DNA from: Macrostomum lignano | Taxonomy: Eukaryota | DNA length: 63,255 nt | NCBI GenBank assembly: GCA_002269645.1 | Contig: NIVC01001602.1 | Location: 1-63,255 of the forward strand | Reading direction: 5' to 3' | In this document: positions 19,186-61,640 of the stretch, one piece after another | Layout: the number at the start of each line of letters is the position of its first letter | How positions within the stretch are numbered: the first letter of the stretch is position 1 | Made by a program: the position numbers and the translations under genes | Notes under the pieces: model-generated | What the model was told of the DNA's origin: nothing | Seen by the model: only the letters and a program-made list of their open reading frames with translations | Database searches by the model: none

Positions 19186-19719
19186 GTCGCATTGAACAAG
19201 AAAATATGCATCTCACATGCATTTATTATCGAAAAGTTTTGATCGGGCATATCTTTGTTTAAAGACTTGCTAAAGCATTGGGGAGAGGGCAATGCAGACA
19301 GTATCTGACCGAGTATCTATAATATGCGCTGCAGGAAAAAACATTGCGGGCAAACCTCGGCATGAAAAATTCGGGGGGTGGCAATTCACTCACGGGAAAA
19401 ATGCACTGCGGGCAAATCTCAACAGGCAATGTGTCTGCGTTTGATGTTTTGGCCAGAGACATTATAGTTAATCATTCAGACGGCTTGCAGCCTGTCGCCA
19501 GATTTACAAACTGGTCTATGAAACGAAATTCCATCGCACCTGTACGCTCGTAACTTTTAATTGTAGTAGCTGGTACCAATTTAAATGAAGAAAAACCAAA
19601 TACGATGCAAAAATTATAGCTGTTTAGCCCTAATGTTTCGAAAATAATTTTCGTGGACAATTTAATTCAATACAAACAATATGAAACAGAATAATTTTTG
19701 GTAATGTATTTCGTTTGGA

Positions 19720-44629: not shown

Positions 44630-44772
44630 GATGGCTACTTATATGGAGCACAAGGCTATTTACTTTTCAGCCAATGAGAGTTTAGGGGCATGGTCGTGCT
44701 TGTGGCCAAGCCAAATCGAGCGCTTGTATTTTTGAATTGAAAGAAGGCATACACACTGAAGATGGTATTGAT

Positions 44773-45083
44773 CATGGAGGAAAGAATAGAATGGAGTGCT
44801 AATCTGAGCAAGTTATTTTTGTCTCGCTAGATCTTCACTTTTAACATCCTTTTCCCCCCGTTCCTTCCTATTGGCTCGTGACTGCCATAGACAAAGTATT
44901 TTTAGTCTCGTTTTCGTTTTCGTTCCCCTCTGAAAGGTCTGTCCCAGCATAGTACGAGCTCGTATCAGAATATGCTTTCAGCCAATAGGAAGGAACGGGG
45001 GGAAAGGGATGTTTAAAGCGAAAATCGAGCGAGATAAAAATAACTGGCTCAGATTAGCACTCCATTCTATTCTTTCCTCCATG
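44773..45083. mobile_element. 311-bp hAT-type MITE
   Basis: ~105-bp inverted arms beginning CATGGAGGAAAGAATAGAATGGAGTGC; perfect 8-bp TSD GTATTGAT at 44765-44772 and 45084-45091. Confidence 0.88.
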
Positions 45084-45257
45084 GTATTGATATATCGCTT
45101 TTGACGCTCTAGATAAGACTTTAGACATTCAAAATAAGACTGCATAGGATCGCACCCTCTGGTAAATAAAACAGATAACGCCACAAGATAATTTGCGAAT
45201 CTTGTCAGATTCACTACCGATTTCCTTGTTTGAGTTGCGAAACTGGTGAAACCACCA

Positions 45258-45745
45258 GATTCGTCACCAGGTAATTTTTTGTTTTCTTGTTTGACTGTTA
45301 TCTGGTGAGTTATCTGAATTTCACCAGATAACATGGCCCGAATCTTGCTTAGAAATCAGATTACATGACAAGATTCGCCACCAGATAATTTTTTGTTTTC
45401 TTGTTTGACTGTTATCTGGTGAGTTATCTGAATTTCACCAGATAACATGGCGCGAATCTTGTTTGAAAATCAGATTACATGACAAGATTCGCCACCAGAT
45501 AATTCTCTGTTTTCTTGTTTGATTGAATCTTGTTTGAATCGGAATTTCACAGGATAACATGGTGCGAATCTTGTTTGAAAATCAGATAACAGTACATGAT
45601 TCGCCACCAGGTAATTTTTTGTTTTCTTGTTTGATTGAATCTTGTTTGAATCGGAATTTCACAGGATAACATGGCGCGAATCTTGTTTGAAAATCAGATA
45701 ACAGTACAAGATTCGCCACCAGATATTTCTATGGTATCTGGTTTG
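45258..45745. repeat. Left subterminal tandem repeat, ~112-114-bp units x ~4.5
   Basis: gattcgccaccag starts at 45258, 45372, 45486, 45598 and 45710. Confidence 0.9.
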
Positions 45746-46304
45746 ACTGAATCTTGTTTGAATCGGATTTTCGCCCGATTTTTAATTTATTATTTCCTGA
45801 TGAAGGCCCGAATCAGTTTTTTGGCACGGAACAGCACTTTTTTCCCGGAAAAAGGTCCAGAAATATGATCTGGTAGTATTTTGGGAAAAGGAAACTGTTC
45901 CGGTTGGATTTTCCGTCAAGTTTTCACCCAGAACTCTACTGAATTCTGGGTGTAGACCCGAATTTCAGTAGGATTCCAGATGAAAATGCTCCGGGTGAGA
46001 TTTCGAGACTTCAGTCGGAATTCCCCAGTGATCCGGAAAAATCATCCAGATCAGCTCCCCTTGAGCCGAAGTTCAGCCAAGTACCAGGCGGTGATGATCC
46101 GGAAAAATTTTAGGACCAGTGGGAATCAGTCGGGCATCCATTACAAGTACCATGGGGATTTTGAGAGGAAGCCTCCGATGGAAAACCGCTGAATACAGAC
46201 CCCAGCAAATGGTTATCCCATCAGGCAATCCCTGGCATCCGTTTGGTCAGCGGCGCTAATTCCTCTTAAGAAGCGAGGGGTAATGAAACCTCGCCCTAAT
46301 GAGA

Positions 46305-48200
46305 CAACTGATCTGCTTTACGGCGGCACTGTAGCGTCCGTAATGTGAGGCTGTGCCCATCCTCCGTACAGGTGACAATTGAAAAATTGTTGCGCCCTGA
46401 TTGTGTGCGAGAGGTTTGACTACCACTGGCATGTAGTCTATCAAAGCTGCTTAGTGTGTCAACCGGCTGAATGATTCTATCGTCATATTTGACGCTTAGA
46501 AGCATAGTCAGCCAACCATATTGTTTGGCACAGCTGGGTGTCTAGACGGAGACTGTGGCATGGTTCCAAATAGCTCTATCTGGCCCAGTATGCAAAGCAA
46601 CTTTCCTATTAAGATAGACGCTAACCCGATTTTTGTCGGTGCATGCTCCATTGGTTTGTCTAAGGCGTTTGCAGTTGCACCAGCCGTGAGCAGATCAAGT
46701 CAAGCGAGTAGTCTATACAGACTACAACGGTCGGTAACCATATCTGTTGTGGCTCAAGGCAGCTTTGATAAGCTGACCTGCGACGGATAATCAATCCTCG
46801 CTTCTAGTGTGGCTCAAGGCAGCTTTGATAAGCTGACCTGCGACGGATAATCAATCCTCGCTTCTAGTGTGGCTCAAGGCAGCTTTGATAAGCTGACCTG
46901 CGACGGATAATCAATCCTCGCTTCTAGTGTGGCTCAAGGCAGCTTTGATAAGCTGACCTGCGAGGATAATCAATCCTCGCTTCTAGTGTGGCTCAAGGCA
47001 GCTTTGATAAGCTGACCTGCGACGGATAATCAATCCTCGCTTCTAGTGTGGCTCAAGGCAGCTTTGATAAGCTGACCTGCGACGGATAATCAATCCTCGC
47101 TTCTAGTGTGGCTCAAGGCAGCTTTGATAAGCTGACCTGCGAAGGATAATCAATCCTCGCTTCTAGTGTGGCTCAAGGCAGCTTTGATAAGCTGACCTGC
47201 GACGGATAATCAATCCTCGCTTCTAGTGTGGCTCAAGGCAGCTTTGATAAGCTGACCTGCGACGGATAATCAATCCTCGCTTCTAGTGTGGCTCAAGGCA
47301 GCTTTGATAAGCTGACCTGCGACGGATAATCAATCCTCGCTTCTAGTGTGGCTCAAGGCAGCGGCTAAGAGTAGTCACTTTTATTTGACTAGGCGGATCA
47401 ATCTTTAATCCGAGGGATAATAAAGCCTCGAAAGTGCAAGGTGAATTGATCTGCTTTACGGCGGCACTGTAGCGTCCGTAATGTGAGGCTGTGCCCATCC
47501 TCCGTACAGGTGACAATTGAAAAATTGTTGCGCCCTGATTGTTTGCGAGAGGTTTGACTACCACTGGCATGTAGTCTATCAAAGCTGCTTAGTGTGTCAA
47601 CCGGCTGAATGATTCTATCGTCATATTTGACGCTTAGAAGCATAGTCAGCCAACCATATTGTTTGGCACAGCTGGGTGTCTAGACGGAGACTGTGGCATG
47701 GTTCCAAATAGCTCTATCTGGCCCAGTATGCAAAGCAACTTTCCTATTAAGATAGACGCTAACCCGATTTTTGTCGGTGCATGCTCCATTGGTTTGTCTA
47801 AGGCGTTTGCAGTTGCACCAGCCGTGAGCAGATCAAGTCAAGCGAGTAGTCTATACAGACTACAACGGTCGGTAACCATATCTGTTGTGGCTCAAGGCAG
47901 CTTTGATAAGCTGACCTGCGACGGATAATCAATCCTCGCTTCTAGTGTGGCTCAAGGCAGCTTTGATAAGCTGACCTGCGACGGATAATCAATCCTCGCT
48001 TCTAGTGTGGCTCAAGGCAGCTTTGATAAGCTGACCTGCGACGGATAATCAATCCTCGCTTCTAGTGTGGCTCAAGGCAGCTTTGATAAGCTGACCTGCG
48101 AAGGATAATCAATCCTCGCTTCTAGTGTGGCTCAAGGCAGCTTTGATAAGCTGACCTGCGACGGATAATCAATCCTCGCTTCTAGTGTGGTTCAAGGCAG
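46305..48200. repeat. Duplicated ~445-bp block (46305-46750; 47445-47887), each followed by a 60-bp tandem array (46749-47360, ~10 units; 47887-48200, ~5 units)
   Basis: Unit GTGGCTCAAGGCAGCTTTGATAAGCTGACCTGCGACGGATAATCAATCCTCGCTTCTAGT; stops in all six frames. Confidence 0.95.
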
Positions 48201-48652
48201 CAGTCGGTAATCTTGTCTTGGTATTGTCGTACAGATCCTGTACAGCTGACATAAATAAATCTACGAATAGAAGTTTGTCTGTTTACGTGTTCTGCATTCA
48301 TTTCTTTCTTATCATTTTAAAATTGGTAGTTTCATTATACTAGCGCGTATATCAAAGGGTAACGGAGCGCATATCGTACTGATAACTACATATAGCTCAA
48401 CTTTAGTGTATAGGAAATTTTGTTAGTATATCAGAATACAAGCAAGCAATGAAGCATTTTTTCCCATTTTTAGTATCTTTGATGGTTCAGTGTATGGACG
48501 TTGGGCAGGAGACTAGTATACATATATTCGTACCTGTATGCAGCTAGTAATTTTAGCAAATGTTTATCATTAATTGCAGTTGGCAGAAATATTCACTGAG
48601 ATAGAACATGTACTTTAACACCGTGCGTTCAATTCGACGATACAATTAAAAA

Positions 48653-50753
48653 ATGTATGTTGCAATTTCAGACCTTGCATCATACTGCGAAATGCAAACC
48701 ACCATTGGTACAAACTGTGTCGACTACTCGGTCACGCAGCTGCGCGAACAGCTAATAACAATGATTCGTGTACCTCGGCCACAGCAATCATTTGAACAAA
48801 GGAATACTCGTAAAAGTTTGACAGAAATCAACAAAACGTGCCAAGCTGTCCGGCGCCAAACGCTTGTTGAGGCAGTCCAGAGCGTTGGCTGCGCTAGTGT
48901 GCGCGAATTCGTGAATGTGCACTGCAAAGGGCTGCTGCACGTCGACGGCAGCGACATCGTCGTCGATGAAGAGACGCCAGGAAATGCGGCATCAGCGAAA
49001 ACCACTTCCGGCCAGGTGGCAAAGCCGACTCATGGGCGGCGGCCGGCAGATCTGCCAGCCAACGCCCAGCGTCTCGGCCAATCTCGCGCACCTATCGCAG
49101 CTGCAGCAGCTCAGAACGACTGTCCTAGCAGGGGACCACCAAGAAATGCGGCATCAGCGCAAACACCTTCCGGCCAGGTGGCAAAGCCGACACATGGGCG
49201 GCGGCCGGCAGATCTGCCAGCCAACGCCCAGCGTCTCGGCCAATCTCGCGCACCTATCGCAGCTGCAGCAGCTCAGAACGACTGTCCTAGCAGGGGACCA
49301 CCAAGAAATGCGGCATCAGCGCAAACACCTTCCGGCCAGGTGGCAAAGCCGACACATGGGCGGCGGCCGGCAGATCTGCCAGCCAACGCCCAGCGTCGCG
49401 GCCAGTATTGCGCTCCTGTCGCAGCTGCATCCGTCGACCCTGCAGACGCTGCCGCCGTCGAATCGATTAGAAAAACTTTCGCTGAAATTATGGACGACGC
49501 ACGCGTAAGTAGAATTCGACTATTCATATACTGCTTGTAATGCCATAGCAATGCTACTGATAAACGCGCATACAATAATACCTTTGCAGATGATGTGTAT
49601 AGAGTCAATCGTCCGTATACTGTGCGCCATAGTGGACGCGGGAGATGAATGTGGCACGCCATTTGACACAGTTGAACGGCGGTTCTCAATGCTGACTAGC
49701 CAGCCATTAGCATATGCTATTCGCGGTGTCAGTACATCGATGGCCGACCGTGACATTAGCGGCTTCGTCGGCACGCACTGTGAGGACGTTTTTCGACTTT
49801 GTGTACAAAATCAACAATTAGTGTTTCAGCCGCTAAACCCACCAAATCGCCGCCTGACACTCGGAGAGCGTCATGCAAATGCCATCTCCGCAGGCAGGGA
49901 AGAGGCGCGCATACGCGCCGTACAATGCGGGTGCGATGCACTAACTGCAGTGTCAATTTTCGACTGGCCGGCCAATGTAGCACGTTTGGTGCAGCCTTTA
50001 ACCAATCATTTCATCAACGAGGGCCAGCAGATCTGCTTGGCCAAGTCAACAATGGTGTTGCACATAGAGAACGGACTACTAGCCCAGCGTCTTGCCGTGC
50101 TTGTATTGGGTCTGCATCAGACTCTAAACCATCGACACGGCACTTCTAACTTTGACGCGGCCCAGTATATGCTTCGGCATACGCTGAAAGCGTTTAAACT
50201 GCCTTCAAAATCAAAGCCTGCATACCACAGTATGCAGGACAGTGTCGATTGCGATGCACCGCTGTGCACGGCATCGCAGGCGCTGTTCATGGAGTTTGGG
50301 TATACTGAGCAGCTTGGCGGGCGTCAGGGAAACAGTGGCGGCGGTCGTCGCCGAATAACTGACGCACTGCTCGGCGACGCCTGCGCCAGACTGCTTAAAG
50401 CTGGGCCAAACGAGCTGAGGTGTCTGCAGCATATTGTATTATGCTACAGCATCATGACTGTGGTCGTAGAAGGCCATTATTTAAATTTTAATGCCGGCGA
50501 GCCCAGCGTTGAACTGTTAAAGTGCGCCGGCGACGAGGCGACGCGTCGCAGAGACGCTTTCGACAGCATGGGCCTACTGCCTGACAGGGTCAGCGTCCCG
50601 CGCCTGCTTGCCACTCGACATGCCGATGCCGCGTGTAGCACAGACAACCCGTCGATCGACGAGTTGCTGTGCTCCATACCGAAGGACTTTGGTCCAGAGT
50701 GTACGCACAGGGACGGCGATTGCCCGGTTCATGAACTAATTTGTGACTTGTGA
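48653..50753 (+). CDS. Transposon-borne spliced gene of unknown function, with 56-aa Ala/Pro-rich repeats
   Basis: ORFs 48653-49540 and 49551-50753 are joined by a phase-0 intron 49505-49588 (CGC|gtaagt...tttgcag|ATG). A probable acceptor at ~48671 suggests a further upstream exon. Confidence 0.65.
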
Positions 50754-50815
50754 AGCGTTGTGTCTATTTTTGTATAGTTCAGTCGGACAGTTTTTGTGCA
50801 TGTTGCGGCCCTGTA

Positions 50816-51330
50816 TACGAGGGTCAATCCGAAACTTTTTAGAATGGTATGGTTATAATGCTAATAACGAAACAAAGCAAAAAAGTCGTAGGGGGCCATG
50901 TCATTTGAGTAAGGTGGGTGGGTGGGAGACCAACTTGACTCCCTTTTGCTACGGAAGTCATAAGTCAACCGTGCTGAGAGATGCGACCATCTTCTTTCTG
51001 ACACTACGGGGCCTCTGCACATTGGTTGGATGGTCATCTCCGGAGAAGCACCATACTGTCGACTGACGGTTTGGCTCTGATCGTACTGGTACACCCAGGT
51101 CTCATCACCACTAACGATGTCAAAAACCTTCCTTGATACTCCTCAGGCGAATTCTCTTAACATTTTCCCACACCAGTCCTCCCTGGCCCGTCCCTGCTTC
51201 TGTGACAGCGAACGGGGCACCCATCGAGTGCACTGCTTCTGCAGTCCCAGGTGTTCGTGCAGGATAAAGTGCACCTGCCCCGATCCAAGGCCCAGTTCCG
51301 ACTGTAATTGGACGTATGTTATGTACCTGT
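50816..51330 (-). mobile_element. Degenerate mariner fragment nested in the CACTA element
   Basis: FDIVSGDETWVYQYD and HPPYSNDMAPYDFF (YSPDL-like) motifs; TACGAGGG TIR-like end at 50816. Confidence 0.8.
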
Positions 51331-52288
51331 TCTAGCTGTGAATTGTTATCGGTTGAAATTGAATACGCGTGCACAGAAACTGTCAGAACGGACTTCTGAA
51401 CAATCTAGAAGGGCAAATGTGGCCAGTCTGGTGTCTGTGCGGAGGCTGGCAGATCTGCCAGCCAAAGTACAGAGGTTTGGCCGTATTCGAATATCGGATG
51501 CCAAACCCGCGTACCCAAGTAACTAGTAAAGTATTTTTTCGTTTATTACTTACTTGTCAGTTCGGCATTTGATGCTTGCAGTTTCGTACCATTTTTTCAT
51601 TTATTAGTAACTGAGGACAGTGCAGTTGAGCGCCGTTGAGCGCCGTTACATCAGAGTGAAGATAAAAGCAGAGTGAATATAGCACCGTTTGGTAGCTATA
51701 GCAGCAGATGAACAATCTAGCAGGCCAAATCTGCCAGCCAACAAACGGAGAACATATCGAAACCTAAGTACTTTAATATGACATTATTACGCGTTACATT
51801 TGTGCAATTATGTTTTCTTTTAACTATTCGTATCCATCCTATCTCATTATTGACTTTTATGCATTTCCCAGTAAGCAAATTCCACCTCTTGTTACTTAAC
51901 TTGTTTTTTACGAAAACGTGTGCTTCCGTTTTATTACAGATCCCGATTGCATTGCCTTGCATTCATTTCATTGAACTATCTAGTCATGGTTTCTATTGCA
52001 AAAATTCAAGTGTCACCGTTCATCCGCCCATATGTTAGAACAATCGTATGTAGTAACAATCAGTATCACTAATCAATCAATCACAATCAATAATCAGTAG
52101 TATTAGCAGAAGTCATTGATCCCCTCATTTTAAGTAGGATACCGTAGTGATCTAGAATAGCTACCCACGTCTATATAGAGTTGACACATTCATCTAAACC
52201 TATTGCATACATGAATGTCATGTAGTTCCTCCGATTATTATTATTATACCGTTTCGTTACAGAACAGTCGAAATCTGACTTCTCCAGG

Positions 52289-55069
52289 ATGGACAAGGCC
52301 GGCACCTCAGCACAGTCTGCAGGGCCGGAACAGACGGACGAAACGCACAATGCAACGCACTATATGAGAAATTGGCGGCTTGGCATACGTAAAAGGGCCG
52401 CACCCGCATTGACTGGCCAGCAGAGAATGCAAGCATTACGGCAACGTCGATTACGCGACAAACGCGCGAATCTGGCAGATCTGCCATCAAACACTCTGGT
52501 CCCTAGCCTCAATGAGGAGGGCAGCGACGCATCCGACCAGAGCGACCCAGCCAGTCTCAACGAAGAGGGTAGCGACGCATCCGACCAGATCGACCCAGCC
52601 AGCCTCAATGAGGAGGGCAGCGACGCATCCGACCAGAGCGACCCAGCCAGTCTCAACGAAGAGGGTAGCGACGCATCCGACCAGATCGACCCAGCCAGCC
52701 TCAATGAGGAGGGCAGCGACGCATCCGACCAGAGCGATCCAGCCAGTTCGAGAGCTGATCCTATTTTCATAGACAGACCATTTCATAAAATAGCCGAAGC
52801 GGATGTGCTTCTAACGACAGGAGAAGCGGCCACATTAATTGCGGACTACTGCTCCAAGTGGAAAGCATGCAGAGAGCAGAAAAGAGAACTACTAGGTTTA
52901 TTACGCAAACTGATGCCTAGCGCTGATGTGCCGCGGTCGCCGCATGTACTTTCTGAGGTTGTGAAAGCTCGCTTTCGACAAGAATGCAGATCTGCATTAC
53001 CGACCTCAGAATGCTACACTGTGTGTGCGAAGTGTAGACAAAATCGACTCGGTCGAAACGCGCCGACGTGTTCAACTTGCGGTAGCGAAGAAGTTGCAAG
53101 CTTCTGGCTATGTGACGCAAAAGATCAACTTCGGCGCTGCATCCGACGCGGAATGCTGGAGACTGTTGTGTGGCCGGCTGATCAACCGTCAGACGACATG
53201 TTTAGACGTCAGTTACACTACGTCAACAGTGCACTGTACAGGGAGTTCCTAGCGTCGATTGAACCTCGACGTAGATGCGATCTGTCGTACACGCTATGTT
53301 CAGACGGATTTTCGTTGCGGAAAAGCAGTAACGTCGAGGTCTGTCCAGTGTACATGTCTGTAACAGAGGTGTACGAACGCATGAAGTATAAGTACGTGAT
53401 TGTATGCGGAGTCTGGGCTGGACACGTTAAATTGCATGCGGAAAGTTTCCTACCAATTGTTGTTCGTCTGTTGAACGATCTAAGGTTCCAAGGCGTCGAA
53501 TATGTAGACGGACACGGCGATAAGCAAATCCTTAGATTGCACCCTTTCCAGGCCATCTTCGATGCCCCAGCACGAGCGGATGCACTAGGTATGAAGCGAT
53601 TCAACGCGATATACGGATGCGAAAAATGTTATATTCGAACAAAAAAACAGCCGTTTGGATCCGGACGTATGTTTCCGCTCGAAATCACCAACGCTATGCT
53701 GAACGCCGCTGTCAGACGTGGGTGTACACAGACAGAGTTTCGGTGCGTCACCGACACTAACATGCTTGCCGATCGGCACGAATATGAAAGAGACAGAATG
53801 CGCGTGGCTCGTACTGACGACAAGACAGACACGCTTGGAGTGCGAGCCAAGTCTCCACTGAGTGAACTGGCCGGGTTCGACTACATTAGGGGTTGCCCGC
53901 CGTGTTATTTGCACCAAACCTGTGCTGGTCTGACCGGCTATCTGATGTACCAGTTGTTCCTAATACGACATCAAAAGCCAGACCAGACGTCGAGAAACCC
54001 CGATTTGTACCGACGGATTAGCCTGATTGATGAACGGCTCGCAAGAATTCGAGTGCCGCGTAGTGTTCAGAGACGCGGACCAAGGTCACTAAACCTATTG
54101 AAGAGGTATCGGGGCCACGATTTTGAAATGTGGATGTTAGCTTACGGTCCGATGGTACTGGAAGATTTCCTTGCATGCTATGATCACGGCAGGTACTATC
54201 AGCTACTGCTGGCTCTATCGTCCGCAATGTTCGCATTGTCATGCGTTGGTTCCTCGATCCGCGAGCTGACACATGTGCGAACGACATTATCGTACTTCCA
54301 TCGCCTACTCCCGATGATGTTCTCGAATCGGGCATTGACTTATAACGCTCATCAGGTATGCGTGCATACCCTGATGCACGCAGAGTTGGCAGGGCCAATA
54401 CACCAGTTATCAGCATCGCTGTTCGAGTCATTTCATTGTAGTATTCGTAAACGCATACGCGGTTCGCGAGCGACCGACGTAGAAATAGCGAACGTCATCC
54501 AAACTGAGCTATTAGTGGCACAATTGGCGGACAAGACAACTGAAGATCTTCAGTTGACTGACACGCCAGTAGCCAGACGCATGACAACGAAGAACATCAG
54601 GTGTGGCACAGTTTCACGACCTAGAAGATATGCTGGAAACCCGAGTAAATGGGAGCGAGTTACATTGCATGACGGCACAATGATCGATGTGTTCAGACAA
54701 TCTATGTCACAGAAAAGAGTTGTCTCCAGCTTTGTTGCCGTCTGGACTGACGCTGGTCGGTCAGCGATAGACTTTGGTCGCGTCTACGAATTGGAAGAGG
54801 ATGAGGATGTAGGCGATCTACATCTACTGATGCAACCGCTCCGTCTGGCCGCACCGATGGAGGATCCTCTATCAGTGCTCGTGGCCGTTCCGGTTGATGC
54901 GCCAAATCGAGGTTGCCGACTCATCCACGTCCGGAAGCTGGCTTGCGATCCCTTCGGTGACATTGGCGGCTATGTTATTCGTGTTCCTATCAAAATGATT
55001 GTGGGATCATGTGCTGTCAGCGACACGCATGTAGTAGCGCTGCCGCATGCGCAACTATCTTTTTCGTGA
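52289..55069 (+). CDS. CACTA/EnSpm transposase (tnp2/Transposase_21-like), 926 aa, intact
   Basis: TLCSDGFSLRKSS..VCPVYM, GVWAG, FDAPARA...FNAIYGCEKC, YLH..CAG, H..VH and SLFESF motifs of CMC transposases. Confidence 0.9.
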   Translation: MDKAGTSAQSAGPEQTDETHNATHYMRNWRLGIRKRAAPALTGQQRMQALRQRRLRDKRANLADLPSNTLVPSLNEEGSDASDQSDPASLNEEGSDASDQIDPASLNEEGSDASDQSDPASLNEEGSDASDQIDPASLNEEGSDASDQSDPASSRADPIFIDRPFHKIAEADVLLTTGEAATLIADYCSKWKACREQKRELLGLLRKLMPSADVPRSPHVLSEVVKARFRQECRSALPTSECYTVCAKCRQNRLGRNAPTCSTCGSEEVASFWLCDAKDQLRRCIRRGMLETVVWPADQPSDDMFRRQLHYVNSALYREFLASIEPRRRCDLSYTLCSDGFSLRKSSNVEVCPVYMSVTEVYERMKYKYVIVCGVWAGHVKLHAESFLPIVVRLLNDLRFQGVEYVDGHGDKQILRLHPFQAIFDAPARADALGMKRFNAIYGCEKCYIRTKKQPFGSGRMFPLEITNAMLNAAVRRGCTQTEFRCVTDTNMLADRHEYERDRMRVARTDDKTDTLGVRAKSPLSELAGFDYIRGCPPCYLHQTCAGLTGYLMYQLFLIRHQKPDQTSRNPDLYRRISLIDERLARIRVPRSVQRRGPRSLNLLKRYRGHDFEMWMLAYGPMVLEDFLACYDHGRYYQLLLALSSAMFALSCVGSSIRELTHVRTTLSYFHRLLPMMFSNRALTYNAHQVCVHTLMHAELAGPIHQLSASLFESFHCSIRKRIRGSRATDVEIANVIQTELLVAQLADKTTEDLQLTDTPVARRMTTKNIRCGTVSRPRRYAGNPSKWERVTLHDGTMIDVFRQSMSQKRVVSSFVAVWTDAGRSAIDFGRVYELEEDEDVGDLHLLMQPLRLAAPMEDPLSVLVAVPVDAPNRGCRLIHVRKLACDPFGDIGGYVIRVPIKMIVGSCAVSDTHVVALPHAQLSFS
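52505..52745 (+). repeat. 48-bp (16-aa SLNEEGSDASDQ[S/I]DPA) x5 coding repeat in the transposase N-terminus
   Basis: Two alternating nucleotide variants. Confidence 0.95.
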
Positions 55070-55834
55070 ATTTGCTCGGGCCTATACGCCTGTGTGCTCC
55101 TTGTACTGTCCAAGCCCATTGTAATGTATTGACGTTGCTTAATAAGTTCGCGGAAAAGACAATTTTAAGTAAGCTGTCACCTCAAACGTTTGTTTGCGTA
55201 TACCCCACAATTTGTACGAACTGATTAAGCAGTCTTTGTAACGTCAAGTATAGTACCGCTCATTGCTGAGATAAAATCTGTTCCACTGTATGTTGCCACC
55301 CTATTTATAAACGCCTTCAACTTTATCTATGAACGTTATAAGACTCATTCACGCAGGCATTAAATAAGGCGAAGGTTCACAAGTTTACACGATCTTTACA
55401 CCAATGGTCATTCGTTTATACACCAGTATACTTCCACAACCACTATGACGACAATGTGAATGAATCTTAATCACTTTAAATATGTATGAAATCTGCCGTT
55501 TTAATTTTTTCATTAAAATGAATCATAACGGACCTCGTATCATACACCAATCAGTAAATATGCGCAATTCACGCATTTTGCGTCCATCATTACACTATGT
55601 CTCGTGTTTCGTGATTGCAACGTTGCATCGAACCTAGCATGTAGTTCACCACATCGATTGGTTGGCCGTCCACTCTCCCTATAACGAAATTCCTTAGATC
55701 TAACTTTAGCGTGTACGTAAGATTTTGTGGAAATTAGGATCGTATCTTGAGAGCGTCCTTTTCTATTCTTAAACATTGTACAATGCGATATTTGAAGTAA
55801 ATATGCTGTTAAAAATCGTTTTCCAGTCGTCTGC

Positions 55835-57493
55835 TTGATTTGGAAAGTAATGGGCAAGAAGAACTGCGTTACTCACTTACAAGAGGACGAACATCCAGTG
55901 GATATAGACGCAGAACAAGCCGAAAAGCGACCGCGCAAGGGTGTACGACCAAACGACCAATCGACAGTCCCGAAAGCTTCGTCGGAAATTCAGTCGGAAA
56001 TATTCGATGGGTCCGACAGCGCGAGGTCAACAAAGAAGAAGAACCGCCAAAATAAAAGTGCAAGTGCAGAATGTGCCCCTGACGGAATGCGCGGTTACAA
56101 ATCTGCAGATTCGTCCGCGTGGGCGGTCATTTACGACAGCAACAACGACAGAGGTGCGATACTTAGCACCGATATTGTTGCTCTTGACGATCGTCATGAG
56201 CAACCCACTGTTGGTTGTCGCATTGTCGTCGTGACAGCCAAAACAAAGACTGCCTCGGCCGCAAGATATGGCGCCACTATATGGAGTGGACCCTACAGTA
56301 GCATTGCTGCTGCGCAACGCGTCGCATCCGCGTCGGGCCCGTTGCAAACTAATAGTGCGCCGAATCCTTGTGGTTCGTGTTGTGCACTAACCAACCAATT
56401 GCGCTCGCATGTTTCCATTGTGGACGAGCAACGTGCGTAACTATTGGTTTACTGCGTAATTTCAATATATTTGTATGTAATACGTAGTCAATAAATTATT
56501 CTATAAGAGCAACTCTATATATTTATCTGAACGCACTTCATCACAGGTGATCGCATTCGGGCTCTGGAAAATGAAATTGAAAATGAGAGGGAACGTTCGG
56601 CACATCTGGCGCAAAGTAACACACAGTTGTTGAACGAAGTTGATCAACTTCGCGCTCAACTGCATTCGCTTGAAGAACAAATGGCGCAGAACGGGAACAC
56701 TGACTCCAGTCGAGACGCCAAAATGCAGCAGGTTATGAGCGTGGTTGAGCGCCGGTGTGAGCGACTACTCAGTGCAGTACATGCTGCCAGATGCACAATC
56801 GGAGGCTCTGATAGTGTCGACGCAGAGTATGCCGATCGGCAAGACGAAACTGGTCCCATTTTAATCGATGACGAACCTCGAGAAGTTGGTATATATGCCC
56901 ACAGCCATTGGTCCACTGACCAGTCGGCGCAAATGAAGCAGACTATGGGTGCTGTGCAGGCTGCCGACGCTATTGTTTCAATGCGGCCACGTGAAGTCAA
57001 CCCAAGCGCATTGGTTCGCCTGTCAAACGACAACGGCTTTAGGAGAATACTAGTAGAGCCGAAAGACAAGCGCGAAATCGAGCAGCGAACGGAAGCCATT
57101 CATCAACTGGCATCGGCCGATCGGCCAGATGCAAAAAAATTGGCTACCGCTAATGGCTCATTTATACGAGCGGTCCTTCGCGCTTTATTCAGCGAGGACC
57201 AGTTTTTGCGGGAGACTTGCTCGGGTCGCGTCAAGGGTCAAGTAGGTGGCCAGCGATGTGACGACGGCAAGCTAGCCGTGGCTATGGCATACGCCAAGCA
57301 CGTTGGCGTAAACATAGACGAAAAGGAGTTTCGGCGTCAGCACTATCAGTGCCGCGAGACGGCCATAAAACGCAGGCAGACTCCGGAAGAAAAGGCTAAA
57401 AAATCCGACGCTGTTAAAAGATGGCGCGCCGCTAAGAAGACACAGCTGGCCGGCACAGCCGAGGAAGCCGTCGAGGGAGCCGCCGAACCTTAG
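55835..57493 (+). CDS. Transposon-borne coiled-coil + BEN-domain-like protein (two exons)
   Basis: Exons ~55835-56432 and 56547-57493 with a phase-1 intron (C|gtgcgt...cacag|GT). Heptad stretch DRIRALENEIENERE...; BEN-like FIRAVLRALFSEDQFLRETCSG...CDDGKL. Start codon uncertain. Confidence 0.65.
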
Positions 57494-58562
57494 GCTGACT
57501 GTCGGCGTTGAGTAGTTTTATAGGATAACGGATCATAACGGATTAATACTATAAATTGTTTTCGCACAATGAACTTACTGTTTTTGTTTGTTTTTTTACA
57601 CAGTACTTCGTCCCATAGCAGATCTGCTATTTTAATTCAGGACGATAATCGTTTGAAATTTCGTCCGGCATTTTGCCATTCATCTTTGTGTGCTTCATAT
57701 TTCAGTTTTCCAGTTTTTTTTCTGTTCAACGTTTACGGTTTACTGTTTCATGTTCAGTGCGACTTGCGATTTGAAGTAGGCGTGCACTTAGAAAGGCCAG
57801 ACACAACTTCTTGTCGCGAAAAATGATCCAGGAGTCCGTACTTATACGTGGGAATTCTAATTGCCCCAATGCACGTAATACTGTGTAACTCTATTATACC
57901 TTGGGAACTAGAACCATATTCGGTGCACCTACTTGACTTAATGAAGGCATGAGTTCTCTAAGAAAGTACGTAATGTTGTGTGACTCAGTATCTATTTTTA
58001 TAACACGAATTCATCTCCTACAGTACTAGGAGGGCCCTCGGGCACGTGTTTCCCCCGTAAACATGGATCAACGAGTGCAGCACGTACGTCAGTTTCATCT
58101 ACAACGTCCACATACGTTAACAGTACTAATAATATTCTAAAGTATTACTTATAACACATACAGCTTTTCCAATCTTTTTCCTAGCTGCTTTTTTAATGTC
58201 TTTATTGTCGTGCTTTTTGGCACCACTATAAATGAAAAATACTGAACATTTTTATTACGTCTTTTAAGTCATTTCATACGTACTGTCTTGCCGAGATTCC
58301 GAAAAAGTGGTAGTGCGAGTTCTAGGGGACGACCCGTTTTGATTTAAATCAATTGCTAGAGGTCTGGACTCTGTCCCAACAGACTTGTGTCTGGGTGCCG
58401 AGTTAGTTGTATTATATGCGGAGTTATGTTAAGTCAATGGTAATAACAAATACCCATGCAACGTCCTTTCAATCCTGTCTCCCATCTCATGATCGCTGGT
58501 GTCCGACGCTGTTTTCGGGCCACGCCGTCTCACCGAACAACCTCCACTTCTCTCTGTTACAG

Positions 58563-59036
58563 ATGTCCAGCGCTTCAAATCGCACGGTTGGTCCATTAAG
58601 CACGCTGCGACTGAGTACCGACGACGCAAAGTATGCGTTTTCGGAGTCCATATGGAATACACCTGCTTGGAGAAACGCCATCGGCGACATCGGGATCGAA
58701 TTGTGCACGAAGCTGTCAGAGTTCTGTACTGTCGGCCACATTCGCGACTCAACGAACAGGATTCCGATATTGTTGCTACTTATTCAACGAGTTACCGACC
58801 AGCAGATCTGCTCAGCGTCATCCTCGTCGGCTTTTACAATTGATGCATGCGACCCAACCGGGATGATTGGTTGCAGTGTCCAAGGCAGCGTACGCTCGCA
58901 GATTGGGCCGTTGCGTCGTGGCGATGTTATTCTGTTGCGCCGACCGACAATTTTTGCACCGCCCGGTCGTCCAGACAAACGCTCTGTCAATATTGTACCT
59001 AGTAACATCCTACACGTATATACGGGATGCACATAC
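58563..59036 (+). CDS. HROB: Transposon-borne HROB/MCM8IP (C17orf53/DUF4539)-like OB-fold exon
   Basis: IPILLLLIQ...DPTGMIGCSV...GDVILLRRPTIFAP...VNIVPSNILHVY parallels recalled human HROB VPxMAVMIK...DPTGEMQGTV...GSVLLLKQIGVFSP...LNVTPNNLVHIY. Acceptor tctctgttacag immediately precedes the ATG; donor GTACGT at 59037. Confidence 0.75.
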
Positions 59037-59115
59037 GTACGTATAACCTGTTTTACTTTTTATCGAACTAACTGACCTTAACGAAACCAGCCGCTATATA
59101 CAACTAATTCTGTAG

Positions 59116-59985
59116 ATTGTCGACTGCACGACACCTCGCTGTCCGCGTTGCCGTAGACAAGCATGCGGCGGCTGCAGCACGGGCAGCTACTTGCGTCAAG
59201 AGGTAGTACGACTGGAACTATTTCTGGCTGATTTGCCAGTGGAACCAGTAGGTCGTACCAGCGGAACTGCTGGCGTAGTTCCATCCTATATCGCTGCTCC
59301 CTGCGGCTCGCTAATGTCTGTCTGGTGGGCTGGCTTTAATACACCGCCGATCGGCGGCAATCAAGTAACATATTTCCCTCGCGCAGCCGGGATTTCGTGG
59401 ACGCAACTGCACGAGGACCCCATCGCAACGCAAGCGGATACTTCAGATGGCACGCCATTCACTTCGTCTCCAGTCTACGAGCAGTCGTTCAACGAAAGCC
59501 ACTTGTTTCCAGAGGGTGTCACTGCTTCGAACGACGCAGTTGATGACGCCGTTGGACGATCGTCCATCGCACTAGCGACATCTGCAACGCCAAGTCGGTT
59601 GGATATTACCGTTGGCACACGGGATTGCAAAGACAATCAGGTAAGAGCTGTTTCCAGTGCAGTCGGCATTTTGTGGACGCAACTGCACAACGAAGCCATC
59701 GCCGCGCAAGCCGGCGCATCAGATGGCACGACATTCACTTCGTCTCCGGTCTACGAGCAGCCGATCAACGAAAGCCAGTTGTTTCCGGATGACGACTATG
59801 CTACGAATGAAACTTCTATCGACACAGCTGACGCTACTTGTGAACGGTCGTATAATATGGCAATGCCTGTCGGCACACCGTCACTGTCTGTTAGAGCTAG
59901 ACAATCGAGAGTGTATGTACCTTACTGTGTTTTTTATAGCTGTGTATATGTCGGAGAAACTGTCATCCATCGCCATTCAATTTAA
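59116..59985 (+). CDS. Probable downstream exon(s) of the HROB-like gene: Cys cluster and a duplicated 41-aa motif
   Basis: Phase-0 acceptor ctaattctgtag at 59115; IVDCTTPRCPRCRRQACGGC; WTQLH...FTSSPVYEQ..NES.LFP twice. An internal donor at ~59641 is possible. Confidence 0.55.
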   Translation: MVDCTTPRCPRCRRQACGGCSTGSYLRQEVVRLELFLADLPVEPVGRTSGTAGVVPSYIAAPCGSLMSVWWAGFNTPPIGGNQVTYFPRAAGISWTQLHEDPIATQADTSDGTPFTSSPVYEQSFNESHLFPEGVTASNDAVDDAVGRSSIALATSATPSRLDITVGTRDCKDNQVRAVSSAVGILWTQLHNEAIAAQAGASDGTTFTSSPVYEQPINESQLFPDDDYATNETSIDTADATCERSYNMAMPVGTPSLSVRARQSRVYVPYCVFYSCVYVGETVIHRHSI

Positions 59986-60417
59986 CTTAATACTACAGAG
60001 TCGTTCCATTGCGCCGACATATAATGCAAGTCCCCGTCGGCGGTCTCATTAATCGCCGTCCGCGGGCGCGACCCGGTCTTTCAAACGTCTGGCTCACGCG
60101 TCGACTGCCGCCAGAGTCGCGTCCGAGTACAGCAGGTCCGAGCTCGCCAGCTGATACACCAGGTCGCAGCAGATCACCAATCCAGTAATATCAATTGGTA
60201 TCCACAGTATAAGTAGATCTACTTATAACTGGACTCCCGAAACTCAGACTTATGCCACACTGTTCTCCAGATGTTTTCGTTCATGTTGAGATGCCGTTTA
60301 GTTGACACCCCGCTGTTAAATAGATGCTTCTCACAACATCTTGAAGCACCAACTTTTTATACGCTTCTTTACTGCGAAATTTGATTGTCGGTGCCTTCTG
60401 CCTTTTATTATCATAAA

Positions 60418-60970
60418 TTACCCGACTGTTATCTGATCAGGAAATCTTGTTTGATGCCAGACAGGATAACAAACAAGATAACAAACAGCATAACACGATG
60501 TTTCCCTGCAGGATTCGCATGAATTACCCGACTGTTACCTGGTCAGCGAATCCTGTTTGCCAGACAGGATAACAAACAAGATAACAAACAGCATAACACG
60601 ATGTTTCCCTGCAGGATTCGCATGAATTACCCGACTGCTACCTGGTCAGCGAATCCTGTTTGCCAGACAGGATAACAAACAAGATAACAAACAGGATAAC
60701 ACGATGTTTCCCTGCAGGATTCGCATGAATTACCCGACTGTTACCTGGTCAGCGAATCCTGTTTGCCAGACAGGATAACAAACAAGATAACAAACAGGAT
60801 AACACGATGTTTCCCTGCAGGATTCGCATGAATTACCCGACTGTTACCTGGTCAACGAATCCTGTTTGCCAGACAGGATAACAAACAAGATAACAAACAG
60901 GATAACACGATGTTTCCCTGCAGGATTCGCATGAATTACCCGACTGTTATCTGGTCAGCAAATCCTTTTT
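60418..60970. repeat. Right subterminal tandem repeat, 103-bp units x ~5
   Basis: ttacccgactg starts at 60524, 60627, 60730, 60833 and 60936; degenerate first unit. Confidence 0.95.
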
Positions 60971-61334
60971 GAATCTTGTTTGAAACAAGGAAACGTAAGA
61001 TTTCGTCACGCAAACAAGATTCATACAAGATAACATTTTGCATAACCGGAATAGGGCATGTTATCTTGTTTGAGCGAATGTTATCTTGTGGTGTTATCTG
61101 GTTTATTTACCAGAGGGCAAGCAAGGCCAGGCTAGCCACGGCCAGAGCATGCCCAGTATTGGCTGCAGGAATGGCTTGGCCATAGACTAAAAAATGGAAT
61201 ATCAAAATGAGAATAAGACGCTCAATATGAGACTGAGTGTGAAAGCCTTCAGATATCGCTCTAACCCTCCGACCCTCAGCCAGCTCTCCTTCTTCACCCC
61301 TTGGGTTGCATCTGACCCCTTGGATTTCACTGTG

Positions 61335-61640
61335 ATGGCACCATCGATTCCTGCAGCAAACCGTCAGCGTCTGATCGACGCAGTAAACAATGGATCAACC
61401 ATCCTAGCTGCCGCTCAAATTCCCAAGATCAAGAGAGCGTCCGCCTTTAGGATCGCTGCGGAGTTCCGCCTCCATGGCAGAGTTGAATCCCTACCTCGTG
61501 GCGGTCGGAGAGAAGAAAATTGCAAGGCTGACAACGAGATGAGAGACTTCCTGACTGAGACGCTGGAGGAAAATCCCTTCCTCACACTCAAGGAAATGTC
61601 CTCACGTCTGGCTACGCAGTTTCCGGAAAAACCCACCGAC
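61335..61640 (+). mobile_element. Tc1/IS630-like transposase N-terminal HTH fragment
   Basis: RQRLIDAVNNG..ILAAA...RASAFRI...GRVESLPRGGRR...LEENPFLTLKEM pattern; no catalytic domain follows. Confidence 0.65.

What the first reader, a model, noticed from the sequence alone, without database searches (positions are those of the whole stretch)
58563..59036. A CACTA transposon carries an HROB/MCM8IP-like OB-fold gene
Seen: an open, splice-bounded exon inside the TIRs with the ordered motifs DPTG..I.CSV, GDVILL, IFAP and VNIVPSNILHVY. Established: HROB is an ssDNA-binding OB-fold protein that stimulates the MCM8-MCM9 helicase during recombination-associated DNA synthesis. Inference: the element may have captured an HROB domain to steer repair of its excision breaks toward templated gap repair, which restores the donor copy and raises copy number. 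I know of no such transposon-HROB pairing, but I cannot search.
Basis: partly seen in the sequence, partly recalled or inferred. Interest (0 to 1): 0.9.

Follow-up and report, generated by a model that had tools for sequence, protein, structure and literature searches.

The report
Flatworm DNA transposon carrying HROB-like gene
A 16-kb cut-and-paste DNA transposon of the flatworm Macrostomum lignano carries, next to its transposase, its own shortened and selectively conserved copy of the DNA-repair factor HROB, a pairing I could not find described, which suggests the element interferes with how the host repairs the gap left when it jumps.

Summary
Exon 58563-59036 encodes 158 aa with all the quoted motifs. 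It matches Pfam HROB (PF15072) above the curated cut-off (37.6 vs 30.8 bits) and aligns with the host's own HROB (28% identity, E 2e-9).

It lies inside a 15,963-bp element (45155-61117) of Macrostomum lignano. At least 40 other copies fix both ends to the base, and 15 of 15 independent copies have a 2-bp target duplication. The termini read CCCTCTGG, not CACTA. This is the "CCC plus 2-bp TSD" animal branch of the CACTA/CMC superfamily described for Schistosoma SmTRC1. The transposase shows the motif order D, D, CxxC, Hx4H, E but no significant Transposase_21 hit.

The gene is not a one-off capture. Every long, older copy carries it in the same order. The OB module plus the first 185 nt of exon 2 has 2/446 fixed differences between lineages, against 83/1161 in the intron and flanks (p = 4e-10).

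The four identical copies share flanking DNA, so they are one or two loci. The protein lacks HROB's N-terminal RPA- and MCM8-binding regions. Current literature says the OB fold binds MCM9, not DNA. The gap-repair mechanism is therefore plausible but untested, and a decoy role is a serious rival.

The parts
45153..45154 (.). Left copy of the 2-bp target-site duplication (CA)
   Evidence: CA|CCCTCTGG... and ...CCAGAGGG|CA. A 2-bp TSD of varying sequence is seen in 15 of 15 other copies.
45155..45191 (+). Left terminal inverted repeat, 5'-CCCTCTGGTAAATAAAACAGATAAC...
   Evidence: Inverted repeat I7, 37 nt, 95%. Similarity of the other copies starts at 45155 in most and within a few nt in the rest.
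45257..45772 (+). Left subterminal tandem array (112 bp x 4.6)
   Evidence: Tandem Repeats Finder. Retained in the non-autonomous copies.
46748..48201 (+). Two internal arrays of a 60-bp tandem repeat (46748-47362 and 47886-48201)
   Evidence: The stretch 47305-47875 between them is kept in most non-autonomous copies.
48650..50753 (+). ORF A/B region of unknown function. ORF B runs 49590-50753 (387 aa). The upstream part holds 162-bp coding repeats.
   Evidence: No Pfam hit. Long matches in the genome lie only at the loci that hold the HROB-like gene; short N-terminal fragments occur at four further contigs.
52289..55069 (+). Transposase, 926 aa from ATG 52289 (open frame from 52226)
   Evidence: Motif order D360 (CSDGF), D446 (FDAPARAD), C465xxC468, H709x4H714, E734, read by eye on alignment A2. 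Weak DUF4218 hit, E 0.017-0.04. At least 100 related ORFs at 33-60% identity in the genome. 45% identical to the transposase of the marine metagenome element L051.
55850..57493 (+). ORF2, two exons (55850-56432 and 56547-57493), 509 aa, with a coiled-coil region; function unknown
   Evidence: Gene model. 27-29% identical homologues follow the transposase in L051. Fixed differences 2.6% against 6.9% in the intergenic DNA.
58563..59036 (+). HROB-like gene, exon 1 (158 aa): fast-evolving N-terminus, a helix at residues 35-52, and the OB module at residues 66-154
   Evidence: Pfam HROB, 37.6 bits. Host HROB alignment. OB part (58758-59036) shows 0.7% fixed differences. TTACAG acceptor directly before the ATG.
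59037..59115 (+). Intron (GT...TAG, 79 nt)
   Evidence: Phase-0 junction keeps the frame open. Fixed differences 11-12% plus a 5-nt indel, against 0-0.7% in the exon segments on either side.
59116..59985 (+). HROB-like gene, exon 2 (289 aa plus stop): conserved Cys-rich start (CTTPRCPRCRRQACGGC, 59125-59175), then a fast-evolving tail with two ~43-aa repeats
   Evidence: First 185 nt: 0/167 fixed differences. Remainder: 4.3%, with 24 non-synonymous against 5 synonymous changes. No Pfam hit. 59497-60290 is retained in non-autonomous copies.
60412..60971 (+). Right subterminal tandem array (103 bp x 5.4)
   Evidence: Present in other copies.
61081..61117 (-). Right terminal inverted repeat
   Evidence: Similarity of the other copies ends at 61117 in most and within a few nt in the rest.
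61118..61119 (.). Right copy of the 2-bp target-site duplication (CA)

Best explanation
SHOWN. The exon is the first of two exons of an accessory gene. The gene belongs to the autonomous master copy of a recently active DNA transposon family of Macrostomum lignano.
- Element: 15,963 bp, CCC termini, 2-bp TSD, subterminal repeat arrays, and a CMC-type DDE transposase plus a conserved ORF2.
- Product: about 447 aa, a minimal and highly divergent HROB paralogue. It keeps the structured helix+OB module of HROB, adds a conserved Cys-rich motif and ends in a fast-evolving tail. It lacks HROB's long N-terminal part.
- The gene is a stable component of the family, and its OB/Cys-rich core has been held constant in the transposing lineage while its intron and flanks diverged.

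INFERRED. In human HROB this OB module is the part that docks on MCM9. The transposon protein therefore most likely docks on the host MCM8-9 helicase and alters repair synthesis at the double-strand gap left by excision. My preferred version is that it favours long-tract copying from the sister or homologue, so that a 16-kb element is restored in full at the donor site instead of being lost or internally deleted.

Confidence. About 0.9 for the anatomy and about 0.8 for selective maintenance. About 0.5 that it acts through MCM8-9 at all, and about 0.3 for the specific pro-gap-repair direction. The overall figure is a compromise.
For: HROB identity:
- Pfam PF15072 above the gathering score, and the only family reported at E <= 1.
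- BLASTP to the host HROB, E 2e-9, covering the helix as well as the OB.

Transposon context:
- Ends fixed by >=40 copies.
- 2-bp TSD in 15 of 15 copies.
- CCC termini plus 2-bp TSD are the published hallmarks of animal CACTA-like TRC elements (PMC1636069).

Integral to the family:
- Colinear copies occur at C12, C3262, C3431/C1362/C230 and C104a/C104b/C2033, together with ORF B, transposase and ORF2.
- Non-autonomous copies keep the 3' half of exon 2.

Selection:
- Differences fixed between the window lineage and at least two other lineages: OB 2/279 and start of exon 2 0/167, against intron 9/74, upstream 41/517 and downstream 33/570. Fisher p = 4e-10.
- Reproduced with BLAST-based mapping, where ORF2b as a positive control gave 2.6%.
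- The frame is still open and still recognisable by Pfam at only 28% identity to the host gene.

Mechanism background:
- The OB fold of HROB binds MCM9 and is essential for helicase stimulation (PMC11055865).
- Loss of MCM8IP impairs long-tract gene conversion in particular (PMC7290032).
- Repairing the gap left by excision of a 14-kb P element needs processive synthesis, and aborted synthesis gives internal deletions (PMC8951532).
- Hundreds of internally deleted derivatives exist here.
Against: - There is no expression evidence.
- No relative of the protein was found outside this genome, so there is no cross-species dN/dS and no tree.
- Pairwise dN/dS between copies is about 1, because the comparison copies are dead.
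- Synonymous sites in the OB part are also little changed (1 non-synonymous and 1 synonymous fixed change). Nucleotide-level constraint or a local sequence exchange is therefore not fully excluded, though the divergent intron between the two conserved exon blocks argues against one exchange tract.
- The protein lacks the region that binds MCM8, and MBM mutants of human HROB cannot stimulate MCM8-9. It also lacks the N-terminal RPA-binding part. No FPGPAG-like motif, as found in the host protein, occurs anywhere in the element.
- A 45%-identical relative (L051) is complete without any such gene, so the gene is not needed for transposition as such.
- Structure prediction failed (pLDDT 41), so the OB fold is inferred from sequence only.
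- Presence of MCM8/MCM9 in M. lignano was not checked.
Confidence: 0.45

Rival explanations
1. Decoy or inhibitor. The OB-only protein occupies the HROB site on MCM9 without activating the helicase. It thereby dampens the host HROB-MCM8-9 pathway instead of recruiting it. Possible effects are changed repair-pathway choice at excision or insertion sites, or limited recombination between dispersed copies.
For: Both HROB contacts are needed to stimulate the helicase: the MCM8-binding region at residues 396-413 and the OB-MCM9 contact. The transposon protein keeps only the OB module, with 34 residues in front of it. No FPGPAG-like motif occurs in the element. A fast-evolving tail with 24 non-synonymous against 5 synonymous changes fits an antagonistic interface.
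Against: There is no obvious gain for a 16-kb element from shorter repair tracts, which would produce internally deleted copies. The conserved Cys-rich motif and the tail could replace the missing contacts. Nothing was tested directly.
Confidence: 0.2
2. The OB module has been repurposed for the element's own DNA transactions. It might bind single-stranded or hairpin intermediates, the subterminal repeats or the transposase, as a TnpA-like helper. The similarity to HROB would then reflect ancestry only, with no link to MCM8-9.
For: OB folds are versatile. The added CxxxxCxxCxxxxCxxC motif (59125-59175) is as conserved as the OB and is absent from the host HROB. CACTA-type elements classically need a second, DNA-binding protein (PMC1636069).
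Against: A conserved ORF2 already fills the position of the second protein and is shared with L051, which lacks the HROB-like gene. The HROB OB fold itself does not support DNA binding in human HROB. The residues shared with the host HROB include the LRR-T-F-P and N-I..N-I..V-Y strands, which is the stretch that holds the MCM9-contacting F553 in human HROB if my unverified alignment from memory is right.
Confidence: 0.2
3. Passive cargo. A host or foreign HROB fragment was transduplicated into the element, as in Pack-CACTA or Pack-MULE elements. It hitch-hikes without function, and the open frame in the youngest copy is luck.
For: It is lineage-specific: the related element L051 lacks it and no other transposase family in this genome carries an HROB hit. 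Only one or two loci hold an intact copy. Pairwise dN/dS is about 1. Most of exon 2 evolves almost neutrally.
Against: The OB and Cys-rich blocks are 10-fold or more less diverged than the intron between them and the flanks (p = 4e-10). The frame is open and matches Pfam despite only 28% identity to the host gene. The gene has its own intron and a good acceptor at the ATG. All long copies have it in the same position. Pack-type cargo is normally found in non-autonomous elements and stays close to the parent gene at the DNA level.
Confidence: 0.1

Closest known systems
Animal CACTA-like 'TRC' elements (SmTRC1 of Schistosoma mansoni; Aedes and Tribolium relatives), CACTA/EnSpm-Mirage-Chapaev (CMC) superfamily
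   Same: Termini begin with CCC and the TSD is 2 bp. There are internal tandem repeats and many internally deleted copies. A large transposase ORF is accompanied by further proteins. The host is also a flatworm (PMC1636069). The motif order D, D, C(2)C, H(3-4)H, E matches CMC (PMC12730594).
   Different: No significant Pfam Transposase_21 hit here, and motif I has C-P-V instead of W-P-V. The element is 16 kb against about 4.7 kb for SmTRC1. No TRC element is reported to carry a DNA-repair gene.
HROB / MCM8IP / C17orf53 (Pfam PF15072), the host's own copy being P0004 (576 aa, BOX15_Mlig028826g2)
   Same: The helix+OB module is homologous. It includes the conserved LRR.T.F.P and N-I..N-I..V-Y strands.
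   Different: Only 28% identity to the host gene. The N-terminal ~270 residues are missing, which hold the RPA-binding part and the MCM8-binding region; the host has KFPGPAGRLP there. It adds a Cys-rich motif and an unrelated repeat-bearing tail. An intron lies directly after the OB, where the host gene has none. It is carried by a mobile element in several copies.
RPA70-like OB-fold proteins encoded by some Helitrons (my own knowledge: Kapitonov and Jurka 2001; not checked here)
   Same: A eukaryotic DNA transposon carrying a host-derived OB-fold protein of DNA replication or repair as an accessory gene beside its transposase.
   Different: Helitrons are rolling-circle elements that generate ssDNA, and RPA is an ssDNA binder. 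Here a DDE cut-and-paste element carries the helicase-cofactor module of HROB, whose OB fold is a protein-protein module.
Pack-CACTA / Pack-MULE gene-fragment capture (PMC6379663, listed)
   Same: Host-gene-derived sequence lies between the TIRs of a CACTA-superfamily element.
   Different: Pack elements are non-autonomous and carry recent gene fragments that are usually not selected. Here the gene sits in the autonomous copy, is very divergent from the host gene and has a constrained core.
TET/JBP dioxygenase genes carried by fungal CMC/KDZ/Harbinger transposons (PMC12730594)
   Same: A lineage-specific accessory gene of host-pathway type that is stably linked to a transposase in CMC-clade elements and is thought to manipulate host handling of the element.
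   Different: A different pathway (DNA demethylation against recombination-associated synthesis), a different kingdom and a different protein family.

Membership tests
HROB (Pfam PF15072) | Significant match to the family profile above the curated gathering score | tested here: met
   37.6 bits against a cut-off of 30.8, E 2.1e-9, profile positions 2-83 of 85. The genome-wide six-frame scan gives the same result.
HROB (Pfam PF15072) | Homology to a bona fide HROB over the whole structured module (helix plus OB) | tested here: met
   BLASTP against the host HROB: E 2e-9, residues 35-153. 39 invariant columns in alignment A1.
HROB (Pfam PF15072) | OB-fold three-dimensional structure | tested here: inconclusive
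   AlphaFold2 with a 3-sequence alignment gave pLDDT 41. A helix followed by five or six strands was predicted, but the model is too poor for a fold search. No PDB sequence match.
HROB as functional MCM8-9 activator | MCM8-binding region upstream of the OB (human residues 396-413, or 362-440) | tested here: not met
   Only 34 residues precede the homologous module. No FPGPAG-like motif in any frame of the element. That this motif equals the MBM is from memory and unverified. The requirement for the region comes from PMC7290032.
HROB as functional MCM8-9 activator | N-terminal acidic RPA1-binding motifs | tested here: not met
   The N-terminal part is absent. Acidic stretches exist only in the C-terminal tail and are of unknown meaning.
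HROB as functional MCM8-9 activator | OB fold binds MCM9 (human F553 contacting MCM9 M45) | not testable with these tools
   F131 in IFAP aligns with the host LFSP phenylalanine. Its equivalence to human F553 is not verified. The feature is taken from PMC11055865.
CACTA/EnSpm (CMC superfamily) | Termini 5'-CACTA... | tested here: not met
   The termini are 5'-CCCTCTGG. 'CACTACAA' is absent from the window. CCC termini match the animal TRC subgroup.
CACTA/EnSpm (CMC superfamily) | Short 2-3 bp (2-5 bp for the wider clade) target-site duplication | tested here: met
   2-bp TSD of variable sequence in 15 of 15 independent copies and in the window copy.
CACTA/EnSpm (CMC superfamily) | Subterminal repeat arrays inside both ends | tested here: met
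   112-bp x 4.6 array at the left end and 103-bp x 5.4 array at the right end.
CACTA/EnSpm (CMC superfamily) | Transposase with Pfam Transposase_21 (PF02992) | tested here: not met
   No hit even at E <= 10. Only DUF4218 at E 0.017-0.04, below its cut-off.
CACTA/EnSpm (CMC superfamily) | [quoted passage not shown] | tested here: inconclusive
   D360, D446, C465xxC468, H709x4H714 and E734 are invariant between the window transposase and P0002. They were assigned by eye only. The AF2 model of the core is unusable (pLDDT 33).
Pack-type captured gene fragment | Non-autonomous carrier, with cargo close to the parent host gene at the DNA level and no coding constraint | tested here: not met
   The carrier encodes an intact transposase. 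The cargo is 28% identical at the protein level to the host gene. The core is constrained.

The most novel reading that the evidence does not exclude
A eukaryotic cut-and-paste transposon encodes its own homologous-recombination cofactor. This is a stripped-down HROB that docks on the host MCM8-9 helicase to drive long-tract, template-directed refilling of its excision gap. Conservative transposition would then become net copy gain, and a 16-kb element would be protected from decay into deletion derivatives.
Probability: 0.25. Interest if true: 0.85.

Novelty: new variant of a known kind. Interest (0 to 1): 0.66.

Why it matters
Cut-and-paste transposons increase in copy number only through how the host repairs the donor gap, or through the timing of excision relative to replication. 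Until now that step has been viewed as the host's choice.

A transposon-encoded and selectively maintained module of the HROB-MCM8-9 pathway would be the first sign that a DDE element manipulates recombination-associated DNA synthesis itself. It would also provide a natural minimal HROB (OB module only) for dissecting what the OB-MCM9 contact does on its own.

M. lignano is a transgenic, RNAi-amenable model with a recently active family: one intact master copy and hundreds of deletion derivatives. The idea is therefore directly testable.

If the protein is instead a decoy or has another role, it is still a new accessory-gene class for animal CACTA-like elements.

Tried and rejected
1. Pairwise dN/dS (Nei-Gojobori) between the window gene and eight decayed copies gave about 1 or was noisy, with very few substitutions in the OB part. 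I rejected it as uninformative because the comparison copies are dead. It was replaced by counting differences fixed between lineages, region by region.
2. AlphaFold2 of exon 1 (pLDDT 41) and of the transposase core (pLDDT 33) was too poor, so no fold search was run.
3. phmmer of the exon against 1.84 billion representative proteins returned only one low-complexity hit.
4. PDB sequence search returned nothing.
5. Word-based homologue searches found only M. lignano proteins: the host HROB, and two host gene models with exonised transposon fragments.
6. Metagenome scans and a viral scan for relatives of the HROB-like protein or the transposase returned nothing.
7. Exact look-up of the spliced product found it not on record.
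Context was inferred from coordinates.
9. My guess that ORF2 has a BEN-like domain got no Pfam support.
10. A literature check that FPGPAG is the MCM8-binding motif gave no hit, so it is kept only as a memory-based remark.
11. I considered that the four identical copies show recent transposition. I rejected this because they share flanking DNA, and C2423 is a further representation of the same locus.

Full report
**1. The observation**

Window 58563-59036 (+) is an open 158-codon stretch. It starts with ATG directly after a polypyrimidine tract and TTACAG, and it ends at a GT. It contains DPTGMIGCSV, GDVILL, IFAP and VNIVPSNILHVY in that order.

Against Pfam it hits one family only, PF15072 (HROB). 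The score is 37.6 bits against a curated cut-off of 30.8, E 2.1e-9, with residues 66-154 on profile positions 2-83 of 85.

**2. Host and host gene**

A six-frame scan of the window's genome (764 Mb, 5,269 contigs) with PF15072 finds a much stronger hit on contig C558. Near-identical copies lie on C1222 and C1204 (79-84 bits).

That gene is on record as a 576-aa Macrostomum lignano protein, BOX15_Mlig028826g2. Its contig length equals that of C558. The organism is therefore the free-living flatworm M. lignano, and it has an ordinary HROB with a long N-terminal part that includes KFPGPAGRLP.

The window protein aligns with the host protein at 28% identity over 132 aa (E 2e-9). The alignment starts at a helix (W36..A39..D42.G44..LC..LS) before the Pfam domain and runs to V152-Y153.

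The two genes differ in structure:
- In the host gene the OB fold and the C-terminus lie in one exon.
- In the window gene an intron follows the OB fold.

So this is a distant paralogue, not a recent copy of the host gene.

**3. The element**

A 37-nt inverted repeat (95%) lies at 45155-45191 and 61081-61117. I searched the genome with 176-231-nt probes spanning each end.
- At least 40 scored copies matched per end, out of about 280 candidates.
- Their similarity begins at 45155 in most copies and within 5 nt of it in all but one, and ends at 61117 in most and within a few nt in the rest.

I fetched 15 independent copies.
- Every one has CCCTCTGGTAAA...TTTACCAGAGGG flanked by a 2-bp direct repeat of varying sequence: CA, TG, CT, TA, AG, TT, AC, AT and others. 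The window copy has CA.
- Both ends carry subterminal tandem arrays, 112 bp x 4.6 and 103 bp x 5.4.
- Most copies are 1.8-8.5 kb deletion derivatives. They join roughly 47875 to 59497, so they still hold the 3' half of exon 2 of the HROB-like gene.

**4. Superfamily**

The termini are not CACTA, and CACTACAA does not occur in the window. The 947-codon frame 52226-55069 gives no Transposase_21 hit, only a sub-threshold DUF4218 match.

However, DeMarco et al. 2006 (PMC1636069) showed that animal CACTA-related "TRC" elements have termini beginning with CCC and 2-bp TSDs. Their examples were Schistosoma SmTRC1 and relatives in Aedes and Tribolium. That is exactly what is seen here.

The transposase also shows D360 (CSDGF), D446 (FDAPARAD), C465xxC468, H709x4H714 and E734 (LFESFH). 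All are invariant in a 43-45% identical relative. This order is the CMC signature as summarised in PMC12730594. I assigned these residues by eye, and an AlphaFold model of the core was unusable.

I therefore file the element under the CACTA/CMC superfamily, animal CCC type. Two classical criteria were tested and not met: the literal CACTA terminus and the Pfam Transposase_21 hit.

The genome holds at least 100 related transposase ORFs at 33-60% identity.

**5. Gene content**

All genes lie on the + strand:
- ORF B, 49590-50753
- transposase, 52289-55069
- ORF2, 55850-56432 plus 56547-57493, 509 aa
- the HROB-like gene, 58563-59036 plus 59116-59985, 447 aa

A complete related element on a Tara Oceans contig (L051) has TIR CCCGCTGAAAAAATCGTCCGG. 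Its transposase is 45% identical and it has ORF2 homologues at 27-29% identity. It has neither ORF B nor an HROB-like gene.

No other transposase family of this genome carries a PF15072 hit. The HROB-like gene is therefore a lineage-specific accessory gene and not part of the transposition core.

**6. How many copies carry it**

The exon is 100% identical on C1602 (the window), C4744, C872 and C5059. These are not independent insertions.
- All four share the DNA beyond the right TIR at 98-100%.
- C2423 repeats the left flank and left half of the element at 99.9%.
- C872 and C5059 align only from 51570 onward and carry a 38-bp deletion in the transposase.

So there are effectively one intact master locus and one truncated duplicate, each assembled more than once. 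Other insertion sites also appear twice with different internal lengths. That fits the haplotig- and duplicate-rich assembly of a recently duplicated genome; the recent duplication is my own knowledge.

Older, decayed copies exist at other loci:
- C12 holds the whole gene with frameshifts.
- C3262 has a 92% identical transposase 3.4 kb upstream, the same spacing as in the window.
- C3431, C1362 and C230 share the deletion 57107|58749.
- C104a, C104b and C2033 share the deletion 58772|59578.

ORF B's long matches lie at exactly this same set of loci; only short N-terminal fragments occur elsewhere. Every long copy of the family therefore has the gene in the same place.

**7. Selection**

Pairwise dN/dS against the dead copies is about 1 and has no power.

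I therefore counted sites where the window lineage differs from all other lineages, requiring coverage by at least two independent lineages. Such changes must have arisen in a transposing lineage and not during decay in place.

| Region | Fixed differences |
|---|---|
| upstream non-coding | 7.9% |
| exon 1, N-terminus | 3.6% |
| OB part | 0.7% (2/279) |
| intron | 12.2% (9/74) |
| first 185 nt of exon 2 | 0/167 |
| rest of exon 2 | 4.3% (24 non-synonymous, 5 synonymous) |
| downstream | 5.8% |

- The core (OB part plus start of exon 2) against non-coding DNA is 2/446 against 83/1161, Fisher p = 4e-10.
- A second mapping based on BLAST HSPs gives the same picture. ORF2b, used as a positive control, comes out at 2.6%.

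Two conserved exon blocks separated by a strongly diverged 79-nt intron support both the splice model and purifying selection. The selected part is the OB module plus the Cys-rich motif CTTPRCPRCRRQACGGC. The tail is nearly unconstrained.

Caveat: the counts are small, and synonymous sites are also quiet in the core. Cross-species data are needed.

**8. What the protein can and cannot do**

According to the literature:
- Residues 396-413 of human HROB/MCM8IP are required for MCM8-9 binding and stimulation.
- The first 215 residues bind RPA1.
- Loss of the protein impairs long-tract gene conversion in particular (PMC7290032).
- The OB fold does not support DNA binding. It binds MCM9 (F553 against MCM9 M45) and is essential for stimulation (PMC11055865).

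The transposon protein keeps only the helix+OB module, with 34 residues in front of it. No FPGPAG-like motif occurs anywhere in the element. The phenylalanine of IFAP aligns with that of the host LFSP. I believe this corresponds to human F553 but could not verify it.

The best inference is MCM9 docking.

Whether docking recruits and activates MCM8-9 at the excision gap, or blocks the host factor, cannot be decided here.
- I prefer recruitment, at about 0.3. A 16-kb element gains from long, processive repair synthesis, and aborted synthesis yields exactly the internally deleted derivatives that dominate this family.
- The decoy reading (0.2), a function unrelated to MCM8-9 (0.2) and passive cargo (0.1) remain open.

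**9. Novelty**

Full-text searches for HROB together with transposon returned 17 papers, and none of the 15 listed reports such a pairing. Related queries also returned no report.

The nearest analogues are:
- RPA-like genes of Helitrons (my own knowledge)
- TET/JBP genes in fungal CMC-clade transposons
- Pack-CACTA cargo

I rate this a new variant of a known kind: a DNA transposon with a host-pathway accessory gene. Interest is moderately high because the hypothesis is specific, testable in a tractable model, and bears on how cut-and-paste elements gain copies.

**10. Limits**

- No expression data.
- No relatives outside this genome.
- No usable structure models.

Noticed in passing
window 49584-49592, 52282-52291, 58557-58565 (also 55819-55852): The start codons of ORF B, the transposase and the HROB-like gene each sit 0-1 nt after a [T/C]TNCAG motif. 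ORF2 has TTCCAG 25 nt upstream of its ATG. This motif is reported as enriched at spliced-leader trans-splice acceptors in M. lignano (PMC8629364). The element's genes may therefore be expressed as an operon-like unit resolved by trans-splicing.
   Followed up: partly
G000 C2560/C2239, C38/C1521, C3026/C3025 (loci L033/L034, L038/L039, L049/L044-L045): Pairs of contigs carry the element at the same insertion site with identical flanks but different internal lengths: 3965 vs 6056, 2045 vs 1830 and 8558 vs 14402 bp. These are haplotigs or duplicated-genome copies that differ by tandem-array length or internal insertions and deletions.
   Followed up: partly
proteins P0006 and P0007 (M. lignano gene models); window-equivalent 59497-59900: Two database gene models contain a stretch 73-74% identical to the tail of the HROB-like protein. 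One of them is named 'Ragulator complex protein LAMTOR5'. The stretch starts exactly at the deletion breakpoint of the non-autonomous copies, so these look like exonised or mis-annotated transposon fragments in host genes.
   Followed up: partly
L051 (ENA ERZ976238, Tara Oceans marine metagenome contig, 10198 bp): This contig holds a complete related element from an unknown marine eukaryote. It has TIRs CCCGCTGAAAAAATCGTCCGG, CCGGA-rich subterminal repeats, a transposase 45% identical to the window's and ORF2 homologues. It has no ORF B and no HROB-like gene.
   Followed up: yes
window 59380-59510 and 59650-59780: The tail of the HROB-like protein contains two ~43-aa repeats, (G)I(S/L)WTQLH...SDGT.FTSSPVYEQ..NES.LFP, plus acidic stretches. 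The tail evolves fast, with 24 non-synonymous against 5 synonymous fixed changes.
   Followed up: partly
window 52505-52747: The N-terminal part of the transposase frame holds a 48/96-bp coding tandem repeat. It gives five acidic SLNEEGSDASDQ(S/I)DPA units.
   Followed up: no
window 48977-49429: A 162-bp tandem repeat (2.8 copies, 96%) lies inside ORF A, upstream of ORF B. It encodes a repeated 54-aa Pro/Ala/Gln-rich unit. There is no family match.
   Followed up: no
window 44773-45083: A 311-bp MITE-like element with 104-nt inverted arms lies directly left of the transposon. It has more than 100 copies at 86-96% identity in the genome.
   Followed up: partly
window 61118-61633: The DNA into which the element's right end abuts is itself a repeat. 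It has at least 70 matches in the genome, many with a 126-nt inverted arm nearby.
   Followed up: partly
window 42740-44638 (-): A retrotransposon fragment encoding aspartyl protease and reverse transcriptase (RVT_1, E 4e-21). About five related copies at 91-96% identity lie elsewhere in the genome.
   Followed up: partly
window 14016-15632 (+): A 538-codon open frame with a protein kinase domain (Pkinase, E 1e-29), presumably a host gene.
   Followed up: no
window 19662-23356: A stretch with long open frames in several overlapping frames of the minus strand. It has strong GC skew (-0.27 to -0.39) and AT skew, so it looks like a low-complexity or satellite-like repeat.
   Followed up: no
window 2388-4458: A large foldback-like structure. 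Nested inverted repeats have arms of up to 318 nt at 98% complementarity, about 1.1-2 kb apart.
   Followed up: no
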